A DNA stretch of 64,000 nucleotides. Source: Gracilinanus agilis. Its lineage: Eukaryota. The DNA is taken from assembly GCF_016433145.1 (NCBI RefSeq), contig NC_058135.1, positions 277,155,697 to 277,219,696 of the forward strand. Reading direction: 5' to 3'. Made by a program: the position numbers and the translations under genes. The notes beneath the pieces are model-generated. The model searched no databases. It saw nothing but the letters and a program-made list of their open reading frames with translations, and was not told the DNA's origin. The number at the start of each line of letters is the position of its first letter. Position 1 is the stretch's first letter. This document shows positions 725 to 62,073 of the stretch, one piece after another.

Positions 725-900
725 TAAGGAGATGGGGTGGAGTCAAAATGGCAGTTTAGAAGCAGTGAAAACTGAAACCACATTGAAGATCCTATGAAAC
801 CAATCTTTTAAAAGTGCATCAAAATATCAGGAGTCAACAATTAACACCAAGACAGAGTGAGGGAATTCTCCCACTGAATACAACTTGAAAAGTAAACAGA
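725..900 (+). mobile_element. L1 5' region, host of the GSKIP retrocopy; continues at about 3290-3540
   Basis: Resembles the L1 5' start at 36950. The sequence reads continuously across the retrocopy once one TSD copy is removed. Confidence 0.45.
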
Positions 901-3289
901 GTGAGAACTCGGAGGAGGGAGGGAGTGGAGGTCCCATGCTCTGAAGGGCAGAATGGAAAGAGATTATAGTCACATGGAGTTTAGCAATAACACAGAAATT
1001 GGAGATTCTGAATTTCAAGATTTTGAAAGAACAGATGTAAAAGACATGAGATTAGAAGCTGAAGCTGTTGTGAATGATGTTCTTTTTGCTGTTAGCAACA
1101 TGTTTGTCTCCAAAAGCCTGCCTTGTTCAGATGATGTTGCGTATATCAATGTGGAAACAAGAGAAAGGAACAGATACTGCCTGGAACTCTCAGAAGCAGG
1201 GCTTACGGTAACTGGACATAATTTTTTTTTAAGATTCATTACTATTTTCACAAAATCTTTGGATAAATATAGGGAAATTGAAAACTTTGAAGGAACTTTT
1301 GGTTTAGGTTTGCTGTCAATGCCTATCATTTTTTTCAAATCCCATTTTCACACACAGTTAGATGGCCAGCAAGACTGCATTAATAATCCTGCTTGTTAGA
1401 TAAATTATTTTCTCATTGGGAATAAATGCCTGTGACACCTTGTACACTTGAATTCAAACCCTAATTTCAATTAAATCATAAGGGAGAGTCAAGTCTCTAA
1501 ATTTCTAAGAGGCCTCCTATTGATCTAGACCAACCCTCTTTGTCTTAGGAGATCTTAGCAAGAGGAGATACTACTACAGACTAAATGAGTGAGAAGAATA
1601 TGAAAGGTGGTGGATTATGCTTTTTACCATGTGAATGATAACATACAAACTCCCTACCATGAAATAGTATACTCTTTGTTGGATACCCTTAGTCCAGCAT
1701 ACTGAGAAGCATTTGGAAACACACTCCTAAGAAGACTGGAAGCTTTGAAACAAGATGGACAGTCATAATTTACTCAACATTATAAACTTATCTGTTAGGC
1801 TTGCTGCTGGAAACTTAAAATTTAAAACCTAGATTCTTGCTAATGAATATAATATAGAGTCATTTTTCTTTTGTTTTTCAGCATTACTGCTTGCTTCAGA
1901 TATAAACTTCTCAAGCACTATTAATAATAAACTATTCTTGTTACTTCGCTTCCACCTAGGGAATTTGGCAGCCCTTAATTTGTGATATAGATCATGAATA
2001 TGTTTAAATTTCTTTTGAATACTACTGCATTTTGAAAGCAAAACAGTATTTTACTATGAAAATGCAGGGTTTAATGCATCTAGTACTACATATGGAATTC
2101 TAGACTTGATTAATAAAATTGGCATTCTAATTAATTCTCTACAATTTTAATCCAGCTTACTAAATCAGGGGTTCAATATTAGCTTGGACTGAATTTGTAG
2201 TGATTATTTTGCTACTGGCCTTACAGGGAACAAATTATCAACTAGTTTCCCCTGCACAAACTTTAAAATTGCTTAAACTATCTATACTAGTTTGAAATGA
2301 TAAAATTAATTAATTGTATATAACTTATCTAGTATTATTGTGCTAATTGACACGGGGATTAGTATAATTATATGTATCCTACTTGCAACAGTCAGCCAGC
2401 TAAATAAAGTTTAAGCCTTTAGCCTATGAATGTAAAAATTACTATCTAATCTCCAAGATACCTAAGCACAGAATATGAAAATAGGCTCCATCTTTTTTTC
2501 TTAATAAAGGACACCATAAAATTGCATTGTTAAAAAGATATCTGTTTTCCTAGGAAACAATATTTTGACCCATGTCGATTCTTATTTTTCTGGATATTTG
2601 TTTACATACTGTACAGTGTTTATATATTCAAAAGTATTTTTGCTTCAATGTTTACTTTCTAAAATGTAGTACTTTGGTATCCTGTAATGCTTCCCTTTTT
2701 CCCTTCAAATGTACAGTGTTTTGTCTCAATGCTAAATCTACAATTTAATAATGCATTGTATGGGTTTGAAACCAAAGGACATATGAAGCATTCAAAGACT
2801 AATATTTGAAAAAGGGATACTCTGTATTTTGTATTTTATTTCAAGTACTAATATTTGTAAGTTTATTTAACTGAATCATGCTGCTATGTGTTTTCAGGTA
2901 TATGTTGGATAAGGGAAATCGGGATTGGTTTTTAAATAGTCAGCTAACACCACAGTAGAAGTAAAACTCAATGCCTGGATATGCTTCTTAAGTCTACTGA
3001 AATTACAGATGTTACTCTTTGTTTAGTAATAAAAGATATCATTTTTGTTCTGACTAAGTATTAATTTGTATAGGCCAGAGGAAACTAAAAATTAATTTGG
3101 ATGACTTCTATAGTCATACCTTATTAGGATGTTTTCATTAAATTTCAGAAGACACATTTTTAGCTTTGTTTTCAATGCTTAGCAGTAAAAAAATCTACAT
3201 TTGAGTTAGAATTACTCATTCTTAGGCTAAATGTAATAAATCTGAATAAATTTTTCCTCATTTTTAGCTAAGCACAAGGAAAAAAAAAA
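901..3289 (+). pseudogene. GSKIP: GSKIP (GSK3B-interacting protein) retrocopy, semi-processed
   Basis: 953-1207 encodes GSKIP residues ~1-86 ([36 protein letters not shown]). 1607-1768 encodes [52 protein letters not shown], with a premature TGA at 1703-1705. AATAAA at 3235 and 3245, A10 tail at 3280-3289, 13-bp TSD AAAAGTAAACAGA at 888-900 and 3286-3298. Confidence 0.93.
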
Positions 3290-3544
3290 GTAAACAGACT
3301 CAATTTTCATAGGTTAAAGGGGAACCAGAAGCAAAACTGTACACAGAGGAGTTTTAGCCAACCACTCTTCTTCCATCTACTGCAGCAGGTTCTGAACCTG
3401 GGCATAGGTGCATCTTGGGACAGCAGAACACCCCACAAACCAGACCCATCCCTTCAAGTCCCAGGTCCTGGCACCAGTCTGAAGTGAAGCCTAGAAGTCC
3501 ATATTTGTTGGTTCATTCAAGCCTGCAGTGCTTGAAGGAATTAT

Positions 3545-8362: not shown

Positions 8363-8858
8363 GTGTGAAGTATATTATTTAGGGGACATTGGTCTTGAGT
8401 ATGGAATCTAGCTCTGGCATCAGCATCAGGGTCACTGTGAGCACTAACGTGAACATCAACACGCAATATCACCAGAGAGGGAGGAGCCAGAGTGTTTTTA
8501 AAGGCAAACCCAGGGAAGGAGAGGGTCATTTTAACTTCTGCTCTTGAACAGATTGACTTCCTGGGCTGGCACTTGGCAAGCAACAGCACAGTCTGGAGGT
8601 GACCAAGTTGGACTGAAATCTGGGACCCTATCTTCCCTTAAATTAGTNNNNNNNNNNNNNNNNNNNNNNNNNNNNNNNNNNNNNNNNNNNNNNNNNNNNN
8701 NNNNNNNNNNNNNNNNNNNNNNNNNNNNNNNNNNNNNNNNNNNNNNNNNNNNNNNNNNNNNNNNNNNNNNNNNNNNNNNNNNNNNNNNNNNNNNNNNNNN
8801 NNNNNNNNNNNNNTATAAATCTGATGCTGAGATGCCAGATAACTTTTTATTTGTTTCA
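8363..8858 (+). mobile_element. Probable solo LTR, spans a gap
   Basis: TG...CA ends and LTR-like composition (tttttaaagg, gacttcctgg). Not seen in copy 2. Confidence 0.4.
8648..8813. other. Assembly gap
   Basis: Run of N. Confidence 1.
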
Positions 8859-14793: not shown

Positions 14794-15753
14794 ATGGCAA
14801 AATTTAACTTCACACAAGTGACTGAATTTATTCTCAAAGGGATTACAGACCGTCCTGAGCTCCAGGCCCCACTCTTTCTGGTTTTCTCTGCCATTTACAT
14901 GGTTACAGTGGTAGGGAACATTGGATTAATTATGTTAATCAGGATAGACTCTCGACTTCATACCCCTATGTACTTCTTCCTTAGTCATTTAGCTTTTGTT
15001 GACTTCTGCTACTCCTCAGCAATCACACCCAAGATGCTAGTACATTTTGTAGTGGAGAAAAATATCATTTCATTCAATGCATGTGCCGTTCAAGTAGGAT
15101 GTTTTGTAACATTTGTAATAACAGAGTGTTATATTTTAGCTTCCATGGCCTATGATCGTTATGTAGCTATTTGTCATCCACTGCTTTACTCAGTCATTAT
15201 GTCTCACAAACTCTGTATTCTCTTAGTTGCTATCGCTTATATATACAGTTTTTTGGTTTCACTGTCTAATACTATTGTCACATTCCGTTTATCTTACTGT
15301 GGCAACAATGTCATCAATCATTTTTATTGCGATGATGTTGCCCTCTTGCCTCTGTCATGTTCAAAAACTCACACAAAACAGATGCTTATTTTTGCTTTTG
15401 CTGGGCTTAACACTATTTGTTCTTCATTGATTATCTTTATCTCCTATATTTTTATCATTGCTGCCATCTTAAGGATTCATTCTGCAGAGGGCAGGTTCAA
15501 AGCTTTCTCTACCTGTGGTTCCCATATGATGACTATCACCATTTTATATGGTACTTTGATCTTTATGTACCTGCAACCAAAATCAAAAGACTCCCTGGAC
15601 ACAGACAAAATAGCAGCTGTCTTTTACACAGTGGTGATTCCCATGTTGAATCCCATAATTTATAGTTTAAGGAACAAAGATGTGAAAGAGGCCCTAAAAA
15701 AGGTTCTAGTTAAAGGATGCAAAACATTCAAAATGCTTCAGTCTAGAATGTGA
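14794..15753 (+). CDS. Olfactory receptor, class II, OR8U3 (formerly OR5R1)-like, copy 1, 319 aa
   Basis: All OR motifs intact: [50 protein letters not shown]. The N-terminus [15 protein letters not shown] and [10 protein letters not shown] resemble human OR5R1/OR8U3 as I recall it. Confidence 0.95.
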
Positions 15754-24674: not shown

Positions 24675-25466
24675 NNNNNNNNNNNNNNNNNNNNNNNNNN
24701 NNNNNNNNNNNNNNNNNNNNNNNNNNNNNNNNNNNNNNNNNNNNNNNNNNNNNNNNNNNNNNNNNNNNNNNNNNNNNNNNNNNNNNNNNNNNNNNNNNNN
24801 NNNNNNNNNNNNNNNNNNNNNNAGGGAAAGGGAAAGGAAGAGAGAGAGAGGTCCCAAACATGAACAGAATCAGCATCTAGGCAGATGAACTGGATCAGAA
24901 TTTTAAGATTAAGGAAAATCAGTGGCTAATCTTAGCTAAGAGAGCTGGGCAGGATAGAGAAAGAGAGAAAAAAAGGAAGGAAGAAAGAAAGAAAGGAAGA
25001 ANNNNNNNNNNNNNNNNNNNNNNNNNNNNNNNNNNNNNNNNNNNNNNNNNNNNNNNNNNNNNNNNNNNNNNNNNNNNNNNNNNNNNNNNNNNNNNNNNNN
25101 NNNNNNNNNNNNNNNNNNNNNNNNNNNNNNNNNNNNNNNNNNNNNNNNNNNNNNNNNNNNNNNNNNNNNNNNNNNNNNNNNNNNNNNNNNNNNNNNNNNN
25201 NNNNNNNNNNNNNNNNNNNNNNNNNNNNNNNNNNNNNNNNNNNNNNNNNNNNNNNNNNNNNNNNNNNNNNNNNNNNNNNNNNNNNNNNNNNNNNNNNNNN
25301 NNNNNNNNNNNNNNNNNNNNNNNNNNNNNNNNNNNNNNNNNNNNNNNNNNNNNNNNNNNNNNNNNNNNNNNNNNNNNNNNNNNNNNNNNNNNNNNNNNNN
25401 NNNNNNNNNNNNNNNNNNNNNNNNNNNNNNNNNNNNNNNNNNNNNNNNNNNNNNNNNNNNNNNNNN
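24675..25466. other. Two assembly gaps (24675-24822 and 25002-25466) flanked by purine-rich simple repeats
   Basis: Runs of N; (ggaaa), (ga) and (gaaa) repeats at the edges. Confidence 1.
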
Positions 25467-33099: not shown

Positions 33100-34059
33100 A
33101 TGGCAAAATTCAACTTCACCCAAGTGACTGAATTTATTCTCAAAGGAATTACAGATCGTCCTGAGCTCCAGGCACCACTCTTTCTAATTTTCTTAGCCAT
33201 CTACACAGTCACAGTGGTAGGAAACCTTGGACTAATTACATTAATCAGGATGGACTCTCGACTTCACACACCTATGTACTTTTTTCTTTGTCATTTAGCT
33301 TTTGTTGACTTCTCCTATTCCTCAACTGTCACACCCAAGATGCTAGTACATTTTGTAGTGGAGAAAAATACCATTTCATTCAATGCATGTGCAGCCCAAG
33401 TAGGATGTTTTGTTACATTTGTAATAGCAGAGTGCTTTATTTTAGCTTCCATGGCCTATGATCGTTATGTAGCCATTTGTAATCCATTGCTTTACTTAGT
33501 TGTTATGTCTCAGAAAATCTGTATTCAGATAGTTGCTGTTGCTTATACATATAGTTTTGTGGGTGCCTTGACCAATACTATTGTCACATTCCGCCTATCG
33601 TACTGTGGTTCCAATGTCATCAATAATTTTTATTGTGATGATGTTGCCCTCTTACCTCTGTCCTGCTCAAACACATACACAAAACAGATGATGATATTTG
33701 TCTTTGCTGGGTTTAACATAATTTCTTCTTCATTGATTATCATAATCTCCTACATTTTCATCATTGGTTCTATCTTGCGTATCCGTTCTGCGGAGGGCAG
33801 GCTCAAAGCTTTCTCTACCTGTGGTTCCCACATGGTGGCTGTCACCATTTTCTATGGTACATTGATTTTTATGTACCTGCTACCAAAGTCAAAAGATTCC
33901 CTGGACACTGATAAAATAACATCTGTGTTTTACACAATGGTTATTCCCATGCTGAATCCTTTAATTTACAGTTTAAGGAACAAAGATGTGAAAGAGGCCT
34001 TAAGGAAAGCTGGAGGGAAAGGATTTGAAAAACTAAAAAAGATTCAGTCCAGAAAGTGA
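33100..34059 (+). CDS. Olfactory receptor, class II, OR8U3 (OR5R1)-like, copy 2, 319 aa
   Basis: Intact OR motifs; about 81% amino-acid identity to copy 1 (about 61 differences by hand count). Confidence 0.95.
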
Positions 34060-43742: not shown

Positions 43743-46418
43743 AGTACCATATTGTTTTGATGACTGCTGCTTTATAGTATAATTTAATATCTGATACTGC
43801 TAGGTCACCTTCCATCACATTTTTTTCATTATTTCCCTTGATATTCTTGATCTTTTGTTCTTCCAGTTGAACTTTGTTATATTTTTTTCTAATTCAGTAA
43901 AGAAGTTTTTTGGTAGTTTGATAGGTATGGCACTAAATAAAGAAATTAATTTGGGTAGAATGGTCATTTTTATTATGTTAGCTCATCCTAAACCATGAGC
44001 AATCAATGTTTTCCCATTGTTTAGATCTAGTTTTAATTGTTTGGAAAGTGTTTTGTAGTTGTGTTCATATAATTCCTCTGTTTGTTTTGATAGATAGATT
44101 CCTAAGTATTTTATATTGACTAGGGTGATTTTAAATGGTGTTTCTCTTTCTGACTCTTGCTGCTGTGATGTGTTGGAGATATATAGAAATGCTGATGATT
44201 TATGTGCATTTATTTTTAATCCTGCAACTTTGCTAAAGTTGTTAATTATTTCTACTAGCTTTTTAGTTAATTCTCTGGGATGTTTTAAGTAGACCATCAT
44301 ATTATCTGCAAAGAGTAATAGCTTAGTCTCCTCATTGCCTATTTTAATACCTTCAATTTCTTTTTCTTCTCTAATTGCTAATGCTAGTGTTCCTAGTACA
44401 ATATTAAATAATAGAGGTGATAATGGGCATCCTTGTTTCACTCCTGAACTTATTGGGAAGGCTGCTAACTTATCCCCATTGCAGATGATGCTTGTTGATG
44501 GTTTTAGATATAAACTGTTTATTATTTTTCGGAAAGGCCCTTCTATTCCTATACTTTCTAGTGTTTTCAATAGGAATGGGTGTTGTATTTTGTCAAAGGC
44601 TTTTTAAGCATCTATTGAAATAATCATGTGATTTTTGTTTGTTAGCTTGTTGATATGGTCAATTATGTGGATGATGTTCTTCATGTTGAACCATCCTTGC
44701 ATGCATGGTATAAATCCCACCTGATCATTGTGAATAATCCTCTTGATCACTTCCTGGAGTCTTTTTGCTAGTATTCTATTTAACATTTTTGCATCTATGT
44801 TCATTAGGGAGATTGGTCTGTAGTTTTCTTTCTCTGTTTTTGATCTACCTGGCTTTGGAATCAGTACCCTATTTGTGTCATAAAAGGAATTTGGTAGGAC
44901 TCTTTCTTTGCTGATTATATCAAATAATTTGTATAGTATTGGGATTAGTTGTTCTTTGAATGTTTGATAGAATTCACTTGTGAATCCATCTGGCCCTTGT
45001 GATTTTTCTTAGGGAGTTCTTTGATGGATTGTTCAATTTCTTTTTATGATATGGGATTGTTTAGGTATTCTATTTCTTCTGCTGTTAATCTAGGCAATTT
45101 ATATTTTTGTAAATATTAATCCACATCACCTAGATATCCATATTTATTGCCATAGTCCCAAATTCGAGGGACTTATGGAAAAGAACCATTTGAGAAGCTC
45201 AAGTTGAAAAAAAATTCTGTCTCCATTTTTCAGAATTGATCCCTAAGGATGGCAAGAAGGATCAATAGGTAAGAGATAAGTACAATCAACAGAAAAAGAA
45301 GTGTGTTGACACAGCAAAGAGACCTATTGATAGTTTTTGAATGTGTCAGAATAGGCCAAAGCAACCAGAGCAACATCATCACAGTAGAAATCATCAATTA
45401 CATTAGAGGCACAAAAGGGCACATGGAAAGCAACAATGGTCTATAGGATGCCAAGAAACAAGCGATAAGTATAACTGCTTACAGCTATTCCTTTGGAATA
45501 GAAGCTTGTTAAGACATAACAAATGTATAGGGGAGGGGATTGCAGATGGCCATATAGTGGTCATAAGCCATGGCTTAGAAGAGGAAGACCCCACAAAATA
45601 CACATGTAATGAAGTGGCATATCTGAATGGCTCATGCAATGAAGCATATCCTTTTAACATCTTGCATGAAGTTCAGGAGAATGTTTGAGCAATGGAGGAC
45701 ATATAGCAGGAGTCAATAGAAGTCATATTACTAAGAAAAAAGTACATAATGTATAATAAATATGAAAGTTTTAAAGTAATATTGTGGTTGCTGGTTTAAA
45801 AAAATTAACTCTTAAGTCATGAGTCAGTTAGCTGCTCTTAACAATTTAGTTTAATAGAGATATAATAAAAAAGAGAAATGTAAGAATGAAATAGAAAGTA
45901 TTGCCTAGCTAGATACCCTATAATTTCTGTCCAGCTCACCAAGGGCTCTCAAGTCCCAATCTCCATTGGAGTCATGGTAGTCTCTTAAGCCAGGAGTCTT
46001 AGTAGTGTCTTCAGCAAGGGTTCCACCAATACAGCCTCCTCCAGGAAAGGAAGGTCTCTCTGGAACCAATTTTTCCAGAAGCCAGGAAAGGAAGGCCAGT
46101 TACTCACTCAGCAAGCCAATACAGGATCCATGGAAAGAGTCTCCTCCTTCAGTCCAGCTCATGAAAGCAGAGTGTCCAAAGACAAACTCCGAAGGAGTTC
46201 TTCTCTGTTCTGCTAATTTAAGCAGAAGGATTTAATGAGCTTTGATGAAAGGTATTTCTCCAGGTGGCAATGGAGGTTTATAGTTACATTACCTGCAGTC
46301 TATGAGGGATGGGTATTGGAGTATCCCTGCCCTCTAAAGACTTCTTGCCTGTCCAATTGATTGGATTAAGCATGGACTGGATTAGTCTTTATTGCTTAAT
46401 GTGCCATGAGGCTAAAAT

Positions 46419-54468: not shown

Positions 54469-55419
54469 CTATGAACTATGTGATGTTGAAGTACTCACTT
54501 TCCTTATAACTTTCTGCAAGGCACTTTTTACCTCCTTGTTCCTCAGGCTGTAGATGAGGGGGTTCAGCATGGGTATGACCACTGTGTAGAATACAGAAGC
54601 TATTTTATCAGTGTCCAAGGAATGGCTTGATTTGGGTTGAAGGTACATGAAGATGATTGTACCATAAAATATGGTAATGGACATCAAGTGGGAACTACAG
54701 GTAGAAAAGGCTTTCTGTCTCCCTGTAGCAGAATTGATCCTCAGGATAGAAATGAGGATAAACATATAGGAGATGAGGACAATGAGAAGGGAGAGAAGAG
54801 TGTTGAAACCAGCAATGACAAAAAGCATCATTTCTTTGACATGAGTGTCAGAACAGGCCAAGGCTACCAAAGGTACATCATCGCAGTAAAAGTGATTAAT
54901 TACATTAGAGGAACAGAAGGACAAATGGAACGTAACAGTGGTCTGTAGGATTCCAATAAATAAGCCATAAGCATATGTACTGGCAACCATTGGGATACAG
55001 GCTTTTTGAGACATAACAACTGTGTAGAGTAAAGGGTTACAGATGGCCACATACCGATCATAGGCCATGACTGAGAGAAGAAACATTTCACAAACTACAA
55101 AAGTGATAAAACATGCCACTTGGGTAGCACAGGCAAAGAAGGTTATCCTTTTAACCTCCTGCATAAAATTCACCAGCATATTTGGAGTGATGGAGGAAGT
55201 ATAACAGAAGTCAACAAAAGCCAGGTGACTGAGGAAAAAATACATGGGGGTATGAAGCTGAGGACTGATCTGTATTAAGACAATCAAACCAAGGTTTCCC
55301 ACAACACTGATCATATAGATGACTAGAAAAACCACTAAGAAGATAGCTTGAAGGTCTTTCCTGTCTGTGAGTCCCAGGAGAATGAACTCAGTCAGCACTG
55401 AATTATTGCTTGTGGCCAT
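54469..55419 (-). CDS. Olfactory receptor, class II, OR5AL1-like, 316 aa
   Basis: Intact OR motifs. [45 protein letters not shown] and QPKSSHSL match human OR5AL1 as I recall it. Confidence 0.95.
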
Positions 55420-59102: not shown

Positions 59103-59251
59103 NNNNNNNNNNNNNNNNNNNNNNNNNNNNNNNNNNNNNNNNNNNNNNNNNNNNNNNNNNNNNNNNNNNNNNNNNNNNNNNNNNNNNNNNNNNNNNNNNN
59201 NNNNNNNNNNNNNNNNNNNNNNNNNNNNNNNNNNNNNNNNNNNNNNNNNNN
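59103..59251. other. Assembly gap
   Basis: Run of N. Confidence 1.
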
Positions 59252-61104: not shown

Positions 61105-62073
61105 TCAGTTTGTTAATTTTATCATAATAAGAACATGATTGCTATTGCTTAAGGCCCTCTTCAAAGCATCCTTCACCTCTTTGTTTCTCAAACTATAGAT
61201 CAAAGGATTTAACATGGGAATGATCACTGTATAGAAGACTGAAGCCATCTTATCCGTATCAAGAGAATGGTTTGAGCTAGGCTGTAAGTACATAAATATC
61301 AGGGTTCCATAGAAAATAGTAACAGCCACCATATGTGAGCCACAGGTAGAGAAGGCTTTACGCCTACCATCAGCTGATTGCATCTTTAGAATTGCAGAAA
61401 TAATATACATGTAGGAGACAAAGACAATCATAAGGGAAGAGATAAACATGATACCTGCACATGCAAAAATCCATATTTGTTTGGAGTGGGTGTCAGAGCA
61501 GGACAGCCTTAAGAGAGGCATGTCATCGCAGTAGAAATGGTTGATAATATTAGAACCACAGTAGGACAGGCGGAATGTAAGGATAACATGGAACAATGCA
61601 ACCAGAAAGCTGTAGCTATAAGGTACAGCTACAAGTTGAATGCAGATTTTAGGAGACATCAAAACCATATAAAGCAAAGGGTTGCAAATAGCCACATAGC
61701 GATCATAGGCCATAGAAGCTAGCAACAAGCATTCTGCTGTCATGAAGGCAAGAAAGCAACCCAGTTGGGCAGCACATGCATTGAAAGAAATAGTATTTTT
61801 CTCATACAAGAAATTGCCTAACATCTTGGGAGTAATAGAGGAAGAATAACAGAAATCAACAAAAGCAAGATGACTGAGGAAAAAATACATTGGAGTTTTT
61901 AGTCGCGAATCCATTCTGATGACAATGATGAGACCCAGATTGCCCACCACTGTGAACATATAGATGGACAAGAACACCACAAAGAGGGGCATCTTCAGCT
62001 CCAGCTTGTCAGTGATGCCCAAGAGAATGAATTCAGTCACCTGAGTAAAATTAATCTCAGCCATTTTTTCCAT
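61105..62073 (-). CDS. Olfactory receptor, class II, OR8U1/OR8U8/OR8U9-like, 322 aa (319 aa from the second ATG at 62064)
   Basis: Intact OR motifs. [35 protein letters not shown] and [17 protein letters not shown] match human OR8U1 as I recall it. Splice acceptor ccttcttccAG at 62082-62083 on -. Confidence 0.95.

What the first reader, a model, noticed from the sequence alone, without database searches (positions are those of the whole stretch)
901..3298. GSKIP retrocopy that kept 399 nt of intron: a fossil of a partly spliced transcript
Seen: the TSD, AATAAA and poly(A) show L1-mediated retroposition. Yet the two coding exons are separated by 399 nt (1208-1606) starting with a donor-like ACG|GTAACT at the codon boundary where I recall GSKIP being spliced (GLK|VVG). 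The junction into the last exon (gagaagaatatgaAAG|GTG) has no polypyrimidine tract, but AAG fits the exonic side of a donor. An internal acceptor-like ccctctttgtcttAG lies at 1547-1548. Inference: the source RNA retained the proximal intron (1208-1548) and included a 58-nt frameshifting cassette (1549-1606), or used a donor 399 nt downstream, and was spliced to the last exon. Either form has a premature stop (1397-1399) about 200 nt before the last junction, which would make it an NMD-type isoform. The copy may therefore record an unannotated poison-splicing event in marsupial GSKIP.
Basis: partly seen in the sequence, partly recalled or inferred. Interest (0 to 1): 0.72.

Follow-up and report, generated by a model that had tools for sequence, protein, structure and literature searches.

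The report
Half-spliced GSKIP retrocopy in opossum
This is a dead, mRNA-derived copy of the gene GSKIP in a small opossum, made from a transcript that still held a short intron and a rare extra exon; it is an ordinary kind of genomic fossil, but it shows that this extra exon is shared across distant marsupials.

Summary
Window 901-3288 is an L1-type GSKIP retrocopy in Gracilinanus agilis. It has a perfect 13-nt target-site duplication, two AATAAA signals and a short A-tail. Its two coding blocks are split by 399 nt (1208-1606) at the conserved phase-0 intron position.

The 399 nt are parental gene material, not a later insertion. The last 58 nt translate to EILARGDTTTD-stop. This matches 10 of 11 residues, and the stop, of the unique C-terminus of the RefSeq model GSKIP isoform X3 of Dromiciops gliroides. 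The first codons resemble an intron read-through isoform of Sarcophilus.

AG 1547-1548 has a branch-point-like motif and a pyrimidine tract. AG 1605-1606 has neither. So the best reading is a retained 341-nt intron, then a 58-nt alternative exon, spliced to the last exon.

Simple retention of a 399-nt intron therefore stays open (about 0.15).

The copy is a pseudogene, with a nonsense codon and 8 unique missense changes, although RefSeq models it as a 117-aa coding gene. The exon is already annotated in one marsupial. In the exon-only isoform its stop lies 22 nt before the junction, so NMD is doubtful for that isoform.

The parts
888..900 (+). 5' copy of the target-site duplication (AAAAGTAAACAGA)
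   Evidence: Perfect 13-nt direct repeat with 3286-3298, spacing 2398 nt.
901..952 (+). 5' UTR of the retrocopied GSKIP mRNA
   Evidence: The in-frame translation just upstream of the ATG (ALKGRM) aligns with AGKRRM in the 5'-extended Sarcophilus isoform P0134.
953..1207 (+). First coding block (85 aa, start codon to the conserved exon end)
   Evidence: Pfam GSKIP_dom E 3e-15. 92% identical to koala GSKIP. F10 is shared only with Monodelphis, which points to a didelphid source.
1208..1548 (+). Retained parental intron (341 nt, GT...TAG)
   Evidence: Starts GTAACT at the conserved phase-0 intron site. The first codons read VTGHNF, against VTHSSF-stop in the Sarcophilus intron read-through isoform. 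A branch-point-like TTGAT lies 25 nt before the AG, and the tract upstream is 0.70 pyrimidine. No copies elsewhere in the window.
1549..1606 (+). 58-nt alternative (frameshifting, stop-carrying) GSKIP exon
   Evidence: Reads EILARGDTTTD then TAA (1582-1584). This is 10/11 identical to the tail of Dromiciops isoform X3 with the stop at the same place; the maximum in 5000 shuffles was 6/11. The segment is 71% purine with GAR-type motifs and ends AAG, which fits the exon side of a donor.
1607..1768 (+). Last-exon coding part, disabled by an in-frame TGA at 1703-1705; natural stop at 1766-1768
   Evidence: Translation. The marsupial proteins have R at the TGA position. Five of the eight unique missense changes lie here.
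1769..3278 (+). 3' UTR of the retrocopied mRNA, with AATAAA at 3235-3240 and 3245-3250
   Evidence: Continuous with the coding part and ends at the A-run.
3279..3288 (+). Short poly(A) tail (its last A's overlap the duplication)
3286..3298 (+). 3' copy of the target-site duplication

Best explanation
Window 901-3288 is a semi-processed GSKIP retropseudogene in Gracilinanus agilis. A polyadenylated GSKIP transcript of a didelphid ancestor was copied into an olfactory-receptor gene cluster by L1-type target-primed reverse transcription. In that transcript the intron between the two coding exons was only half dealt with. The first 341 nt (1208-1548), a complete GT...AG unit, were retained. A 58-nt alternative exon (1549-1606) was included. 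The rest of the intron was spliced out, joining that exon to the last exon at 1606|1607. The same RNA can also be described as use of a donor 399 nt downstream of the normal one. The copy has no function and has decayed. Shown: the retroposition hallmarks, the conserved intron position, the homology of the 58 nt to an annotated marsupial alternative exon, and the disabling changes. Inferred: that 1606|1607 is an exon-exon junction, and that the parental intron continues beyond the 58-nt exon.
For: Retroposition: 13-nt perfect target-site duplication, two AATAAA, an A-tail, and a 5' UTR colinear with a Sarcophilus transcript. Species and source: the RefSeq protein XP_044538038.1 of G. agilis is 100% identical to 953-1207 plus 1607-1702. 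States shared only with Monodelphis indicate a didelphid parent. Insert is parental material: the 58-nt tail matches Dromiciops isoform X3 at 10/11 residues plus the stop, in the frame set by joining it to the upstream exon. The insert start resembles the Sarcophilus intron read-through tail. Intron position: AGG|GTAA in loci L001 and L002. Junction logic: AG 1547-1548 has a yTnAy motif 25 nt upstream and a 0.70 pyrimidine tract. AG 1605-1606 has no such motif, 0.20 pyrimidine, an AAG triplet, and 9 other AG dinucleotides in the 58 nt before it. The real acceptors of L001 and L002 are CAG with 0.50-0.60 pyrimidine. Pseudogene: TGA at 1703 where the marsupial proteins have R, and 8 missense changes at sites where none of 11 marsupials or echidna has the copy's residue.
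Against: The parental G. agilis or Monodelphis intron was never seen, so colinearity and the GT after the 1606 equivalent are untested. The intron is short in the two non-mammalian loci (610 and 95 nt), so a 399-nt marsupial intron is not implausible on its face. The isoform X3 protein would look the same if it came from an alternative acceptor 58 nt upstream of the normal one. A search for intron read-through ORFs with the insert's translation found nothing; that blank carries little weight, because no marsupial ORF from run assemblies appears in that collection at all.
Confidence: 0.75

Rival explanations
1. Simple intron retention. The marsupial GSKIP intron is only about 399 nt long, the whole of it was retained in the source RNA, and Dromiciops isoform X3 arises from an alternative acceptor 58 nt upstream of the normal one.
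For: 1208-1606 begins GT and ends AG, and RefSeq models it as an intron. The same intron is 610 nt and 95 nt in two other vertebrate loci. Short introns with weak sites are the ones most often retained (general knowledge).
Against: The supposed constitutive acceptor at 1606 has 0.20 pyrimidine, an AAG triplet and no branch-point-like motif. It also lies behind a much stronger acceptor and 9 intervening AGs. With that layout the frameshifted product should dominate, which does not fit a protein conserved in all marsupials. The few percent of divergence suggested by the word shares cannot have erased a pyrimidine tract.
Confidence: 0.15
2. A working two-exon GSKIP-like gene, as in the RefSeq model XP_044538038.1 (117 aa). 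The copy is transcribed, 1208-1606 is spliced out, and a shortened protein is made.
For: An automatic gene model exists with exactly this structure. The GT...AG borders are intact.
Against: The reading frame ends at a TGA where all marsupial proteins have R. This removes the last 20 residues, including the equivalent of L130, which is needed for GSK3beta binding (PMC6832502 abstract). There are 8 missense changes at sites where no relative has the copy's residue. The acceptor is weak. No expression data could be obtained.
Confidence: 0.05
3. The 399 nt are an unrelated element that inserted into a fully processed retrocopy after retroposition.
For: None beyond the a priori possibility.
Against: No flanking duplication of its own, and no copies elsewhere in the 64-kb window. 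It sits exactly at the conserved intron site. Its 3' end encodes the tail of isoform X3, and its 5' end resembles the Sarcophilus intron read-through.
Confidence: 0.01

Closest known systems
Partially processed (semi-processed) retrocopies, e.g. rodent preproinsulin I (Soares et al. 1985; class named in the review PMC5470649)
   Same: An L1-type copy of a transcript that still carried one parental intron while other splicing was done; flanked by a duplication and an A-tail.
   Different: Preproinsulin I is a working gene whose retained intron is spliced. This copy is disabled, and the retained piece is an intron fragment plus an alternative exon.
Processed pseudogenes as records of splice variants (Shemesh et al. 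[quoted passage not shown] Also Zfa, a retroposon from an alternative Zfx transcript (same reference list).
   Same: The retrocopy preserves an alternative isoform of its parent.
   Different: A single marsupial case. The content of the 2006 paper is recalled from memory and was not read here.
GSKIP isoform X3 of Dromiciops gliroides (RefSeq model, P0003)
   Same: Uses the homologous alternative exon after the same upstream exon, with tail ETLARGDTTTD and the stop at the same codon.
   Different: It belongs to the parental gene of another marsupial order, and its upstream intron is removed. Its downstream structure is not visible from the protein.
Sarcophilus harrisii GSKIP isoform A0A7N4V1D3 (P0134)
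   Same: Reads from the same exon end into the intron (VTHSSF-stop), as this copy does (VTGHNF...).
   Different: It is a transcript model of the parental gene, and only six intron codons can be compared.

Membership tests
L1-mediated processed retrocopy | Target-site duplication flanking the copy | tested here: met
   13-nt perfect repeat at 888-900 and 3286-3298.
L1-mediated processed retrocopy | Poly(A) tail after a polyadenylation signal at the 3' end | tested here: met
   AATAAA at 3235 and 3245; A-run at 3279-3288.
L1-mediated processed retrocopy | Parental introns absent | tested here: inconclusive
   399 nt occupy the one conserved coding-region intron site. The junction 1606|1607 looks spliced (no acceptor signals), but the parental gene was not available.
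L1-mediated processed retrocopy | Lies away from the parental locus | tested here: inconclusive
   The window holds four olfactory-receptor ORFs and no other GSKIP-related sequence. The position of the parental gene in this genome is unknown.
Semi-processed retrocopy | Retained sequence is colinear with a parental intron at the parental intron position | tested here: inconclusive
   The position is met. Both ends match marsupial isoform tails. The nucleotide alignment to the parental intron could not be run.
Poison (NMD-triggering) cassette exon | Alternative exon that brings in a premature stop | tested here: met
   58 nt (3n+1) with an in-frame TAA at 1582-1584. The homologous exon ends the Dromiciops X3 protein.
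Poison (NMD-triggering) cassette exon | Stop more than 50-55 nt upstream of the last exon-exon junction | tested here: not met
   The TAA is 22 nt before 1606 in the exon-only isoform. Only the intron-retaining form has a stop 207 nt upstream, TAG at 1397.
Poison (NMD-triggering) cassette exon | Isoform rises when NMD is blocked | not testable with these tools
   No read data could be laid.
Functional retrogene | Intact reading frame under purifying selection | tested here: not met
   TGA at 1703 and 8 unique missense changes at sites where no relative has the copy's residue. dN/dS was not computable without parental DNA.

The most novel reading that the evidence does not exclude
The 58-nt exon is an old, marsupial-wide alternative exon, present in both Didelphimorphia and Microbiotheria. 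It would not be a true NMD switch. It would make a stable truncated GSKIP of 85 + 11 residues. That protein keeps the PKA-anchoring residues (V41/L45) but lacks the GSK3beta-binding C-terminus (L130), because its stop lies only 22 nt before the last junction. This would be a regulated way to uncouple the two kinase contacts.
Probability: 0.2. Interest if true: 0.5.

Novelty: new member of a known kind. Interest (0 to 1): 0.3.

Why it matters
The value is modest. The copy adds one clear marsupial case to the known class of partially processed retrocopies. It gives independent, DNA-level evidence that an alternative GSKIP exon, so far seen only in an automatic Dromiciops model, also existed in the opossum lineage and was spliced to the last exon. 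It also flags a RefSeq 'GSKIP-like' coding model (XP_044538038.1) as a likely pseudogene whose modelled 'intron' is inherited parental intron sequence.

Tried and rejected
No read, junction or empty-site evidence exists. I sent those places to no database search afterwards. One local repeat scan by reference spanned them.
- Intron read-through ORF search (953-1396, residues 80-148): no candidates. The blank is uninformative, because no marsupial ORFs from run assemblies appear in that collection.
- Metagenome scan with the first coding block: only a non-mammalian tetrapod-like locus (L001) and a fish-like locus (L002). Neither was taken for human. Their introns show no similarity to the insert.
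- Exact scan of bacterial and archaeal genome contigs for a 24-nt core of the 58-nt exon: nothing, as expected.
- Earlier scan notes: none on GSKIP or near this place.
- Eutherian alternative isoforms (Fukomys, Meriones, Suricata, Ochotona): their tails are unrelated to the marsupial exon.
- Shemesh et al. 2006 is not held in the library.

Full report
**What is there.** A perfect 13-nt direct repeat, AAAAGTAAACAGA, lies at 888-900 and 3286-3298. Between the two copies lies an mRNA-like unit:
- 52 nt of leader.
- An ATG at 953 opening an 85-codon block to 1207.
- 399 nt of non-coding sequence (1208-1606).
- A second coding block from 1607 to the natural stop at 1766-1768, interrupted by a TGA at 1703.
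- About 1.5 kb of 3' UTR with AATAAA at 3235 and 3245.
- An A-run at 3279-3288.

The first block matches the Pfam GSKIP domain (E 3e-15). The second gives a sub-threshold match to the same domain (E 0.008, 16.7 bits against a cut-off of 20.9).

**Organism and annotation.** A word-based protein search with the first block returned a 100% match to XP_044538038.1, 'GSK3-beta interaction protein-like' of Gracilinanus agilis. Its 117 residues are exactly 953-1207 plus 1607-1702. RefSeq therefore models 1208-1606 as an intron and stops at the TGA. The next hits are marsupial GSKIP proteins at 89-92% identity. Two residue states are shared only with Monodelphis, which fits a didelphid parental gene.

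**The break is at the real intron position.** No marsupial genomic GSKIP could be fetched. A metagenome scan gave two non-human genomic GSKIP loci: L001 (non-mammalian tetrapod-like) and L002 (fish-like). Both have an intron in phase 0 right after the R codon (AGG|GTAA...). The introns are 610 and 95 nt long, with CAG acceptors preceded by 0.60 and 0.50 pyrimidine. Many database proteins are read-throughs from this exon end into the intron, such as the mouse tail VTHFYF and others.

**The 399 nt are parental gene material.**
- Dromiciops gliroides GSKIP isoform X3 (P0003) ends ...EAGLR|ETLARGDTTTD. Window 1549-1584, read in the frame obtained by joining 1549 to the upstream exon, gives EILARGDTTTD followed by TAA.
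- That is 10/11 identities with the stop at the same codon. In 5000 shuffles of the insert the best match in any frame was 6/11.
- At the other end, the Sarcophilus isoform A0A7N4V1D3 (P0134) reads ...EAGLR|VTHSSF-stop, where the window reads ...EAGLT|VTGHNF.
- The leader of the copy is colinear with the same Sarcophilus transcript (ALKGRM against AGKRRM).
- The insert has no copies elsewhere in the window and no duplication of its own.

A later insertion of an unrelated element is therefore excluded.

**Which RNA was copied.** Two readings remain.
- (a) The parental intron is longer. The source RNA kept its first 341 nt, included the 58-nt exon and was spliced from 1606 to the last exon.
- (b) The parental intron is just 399 nt and was retained whole, and isoform X3 uses an alternative acceptor.

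The signals favour (a). AG 1547-1548 has a yTnAy motif (TTGAT) 25 nt upstream and 0.70 pyrimidine over -23..-4. AG 1605-1606 has no such motif within 8-50 nt, 0.20 pyrimidine and an AAG triplet. It also follows 9 other AG dinucleotides within the 58 nt. The 58 nt are 71% purine with GAAGAA/GAGGAG-type motifs typical of exonic enhancers, and they end AAG, the usual exon side of a donor (motif meaning from general knowledge).

Under (b) the strong upstream acceptor should win, making the frameshifted product the main one. That does not fit a protein conserved in every marsupial. The short introns in L001 and L002 keep (b) alive. I put (a) at 0.75 and (b) at 0.15.

**State of the copy.** Compared piece by piece with 11 marsupial GSKIP proteins and echidna, the copy has 8 missense changes to residues that none of them has. 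Most of these sites are otherwise invariant. It also has a TGA where all marsupial proteins have R. The stop removes the last 20 residues, which include the equivalent of L130. L130 is needed for GSK3beta binding, and V41/L45 are needed for PKA binding (PMC6832502 abstract). The copy is a pseudogene, and the RefSeq coding model is probably an artefact of protein-guided prediction.

**Rough age (weak inference).** Runs from three other organisms each hold 0.23-0.24 of the sampled 31-mers of 901-3298, and one DNA-like run holds 0.27. These may be parental-type mRNAs. If so, the tool's own calibration (5% change leaves about a fifth of the words) suggests roughly 4-5% divergence.

**NMD.** In the copied RNA the frame runs into the retained intron and stops at 1397-1399, 207 nt before 1606. 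In the exon-only isoform (Dromiciops X3 type) the TAA lies only 22 nt before the junction. 'Poison exon' is therefore not established. A stable truncated protein of 85 + 11 residues is an open alternative.

**Comparison with known things.** Partially processed retrocopies are a recognised class (Soares 1985; Baertsch 2008; Zhang 2014, as cited in PMC5470649). Using processed pseudogenes as records of splice variants goes back at least to Shemesh et al. 2006, which is listed there but not held. Eutherian GSKIP models also carry lineage-specific extra exons in this intron, unrelated in sequence to the marsupial one. This is a new member of a known kind.

**Limits and rules followed.**
I sent those places to no database search afterwards. 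A local repeat scan by reference did span them.
- The searches were blank and carry little weight.

**Surroundings.** The copy lies in an olfactory-receptor cluster with four intact receptor ORFs, an L1-type reverse-transcriptase fragment, and four N runs.

Noticed in passing
window 14794-15753 (+), 33100-34059 (+), 54469-55419 (-), 61105-62073 (-): Four intact ORFs of 316-322 aa match the Pfam olfactory-receptor family 7tm_4 (E 1e-49 to 1e-58). Pairwise identity is 60-81%, so the retrocopy sits in an olfactory-receptor gene cluster.
   Followed up: partly
window 43983-44570 (-): A 195-aa ORF matches reverse transcriptase RVT_1 (E 2e-19). It is probably a fragment of an L1-type element, the kind of machinery that made the retrocopy.
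   Followed up: no
window 953-1702: RefSeq models this locus as a protein-coding gene (XP_044538038.1, 117 aa) by splicing out 1208-1606 and stopping at the TGA at 1703. No canonical G. agilis GSKIP protein appeared in either protein search, so the parental gene may be unannotated or carry a different model in that annotation.
   Followed up: partly
one search run list (window 901-3298): Fourteen small runs from three other coded organisms all hold nearly the same share (0.23-0.24) of the stretch's sampled words, one of them a run of only 2 million letters.
   Followed up: no
window 8648-8813, 24675-24822, 25002-25466, 59103-59251: Four runs of N (148-465 nt).
   Followed up: no
proteins P0030, P0035, P0056, P0074: RefSeq models of several eutherians (Fukomys, Meriones, Ochotona, Suricata) also insert unrelated lineage-specific sequence after the same GSKIP exon end. 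The Meriones model runs on into the last exon in a shifted frame (GGGLCF). This intron seems prone to alternative exons.
   Followed up: no
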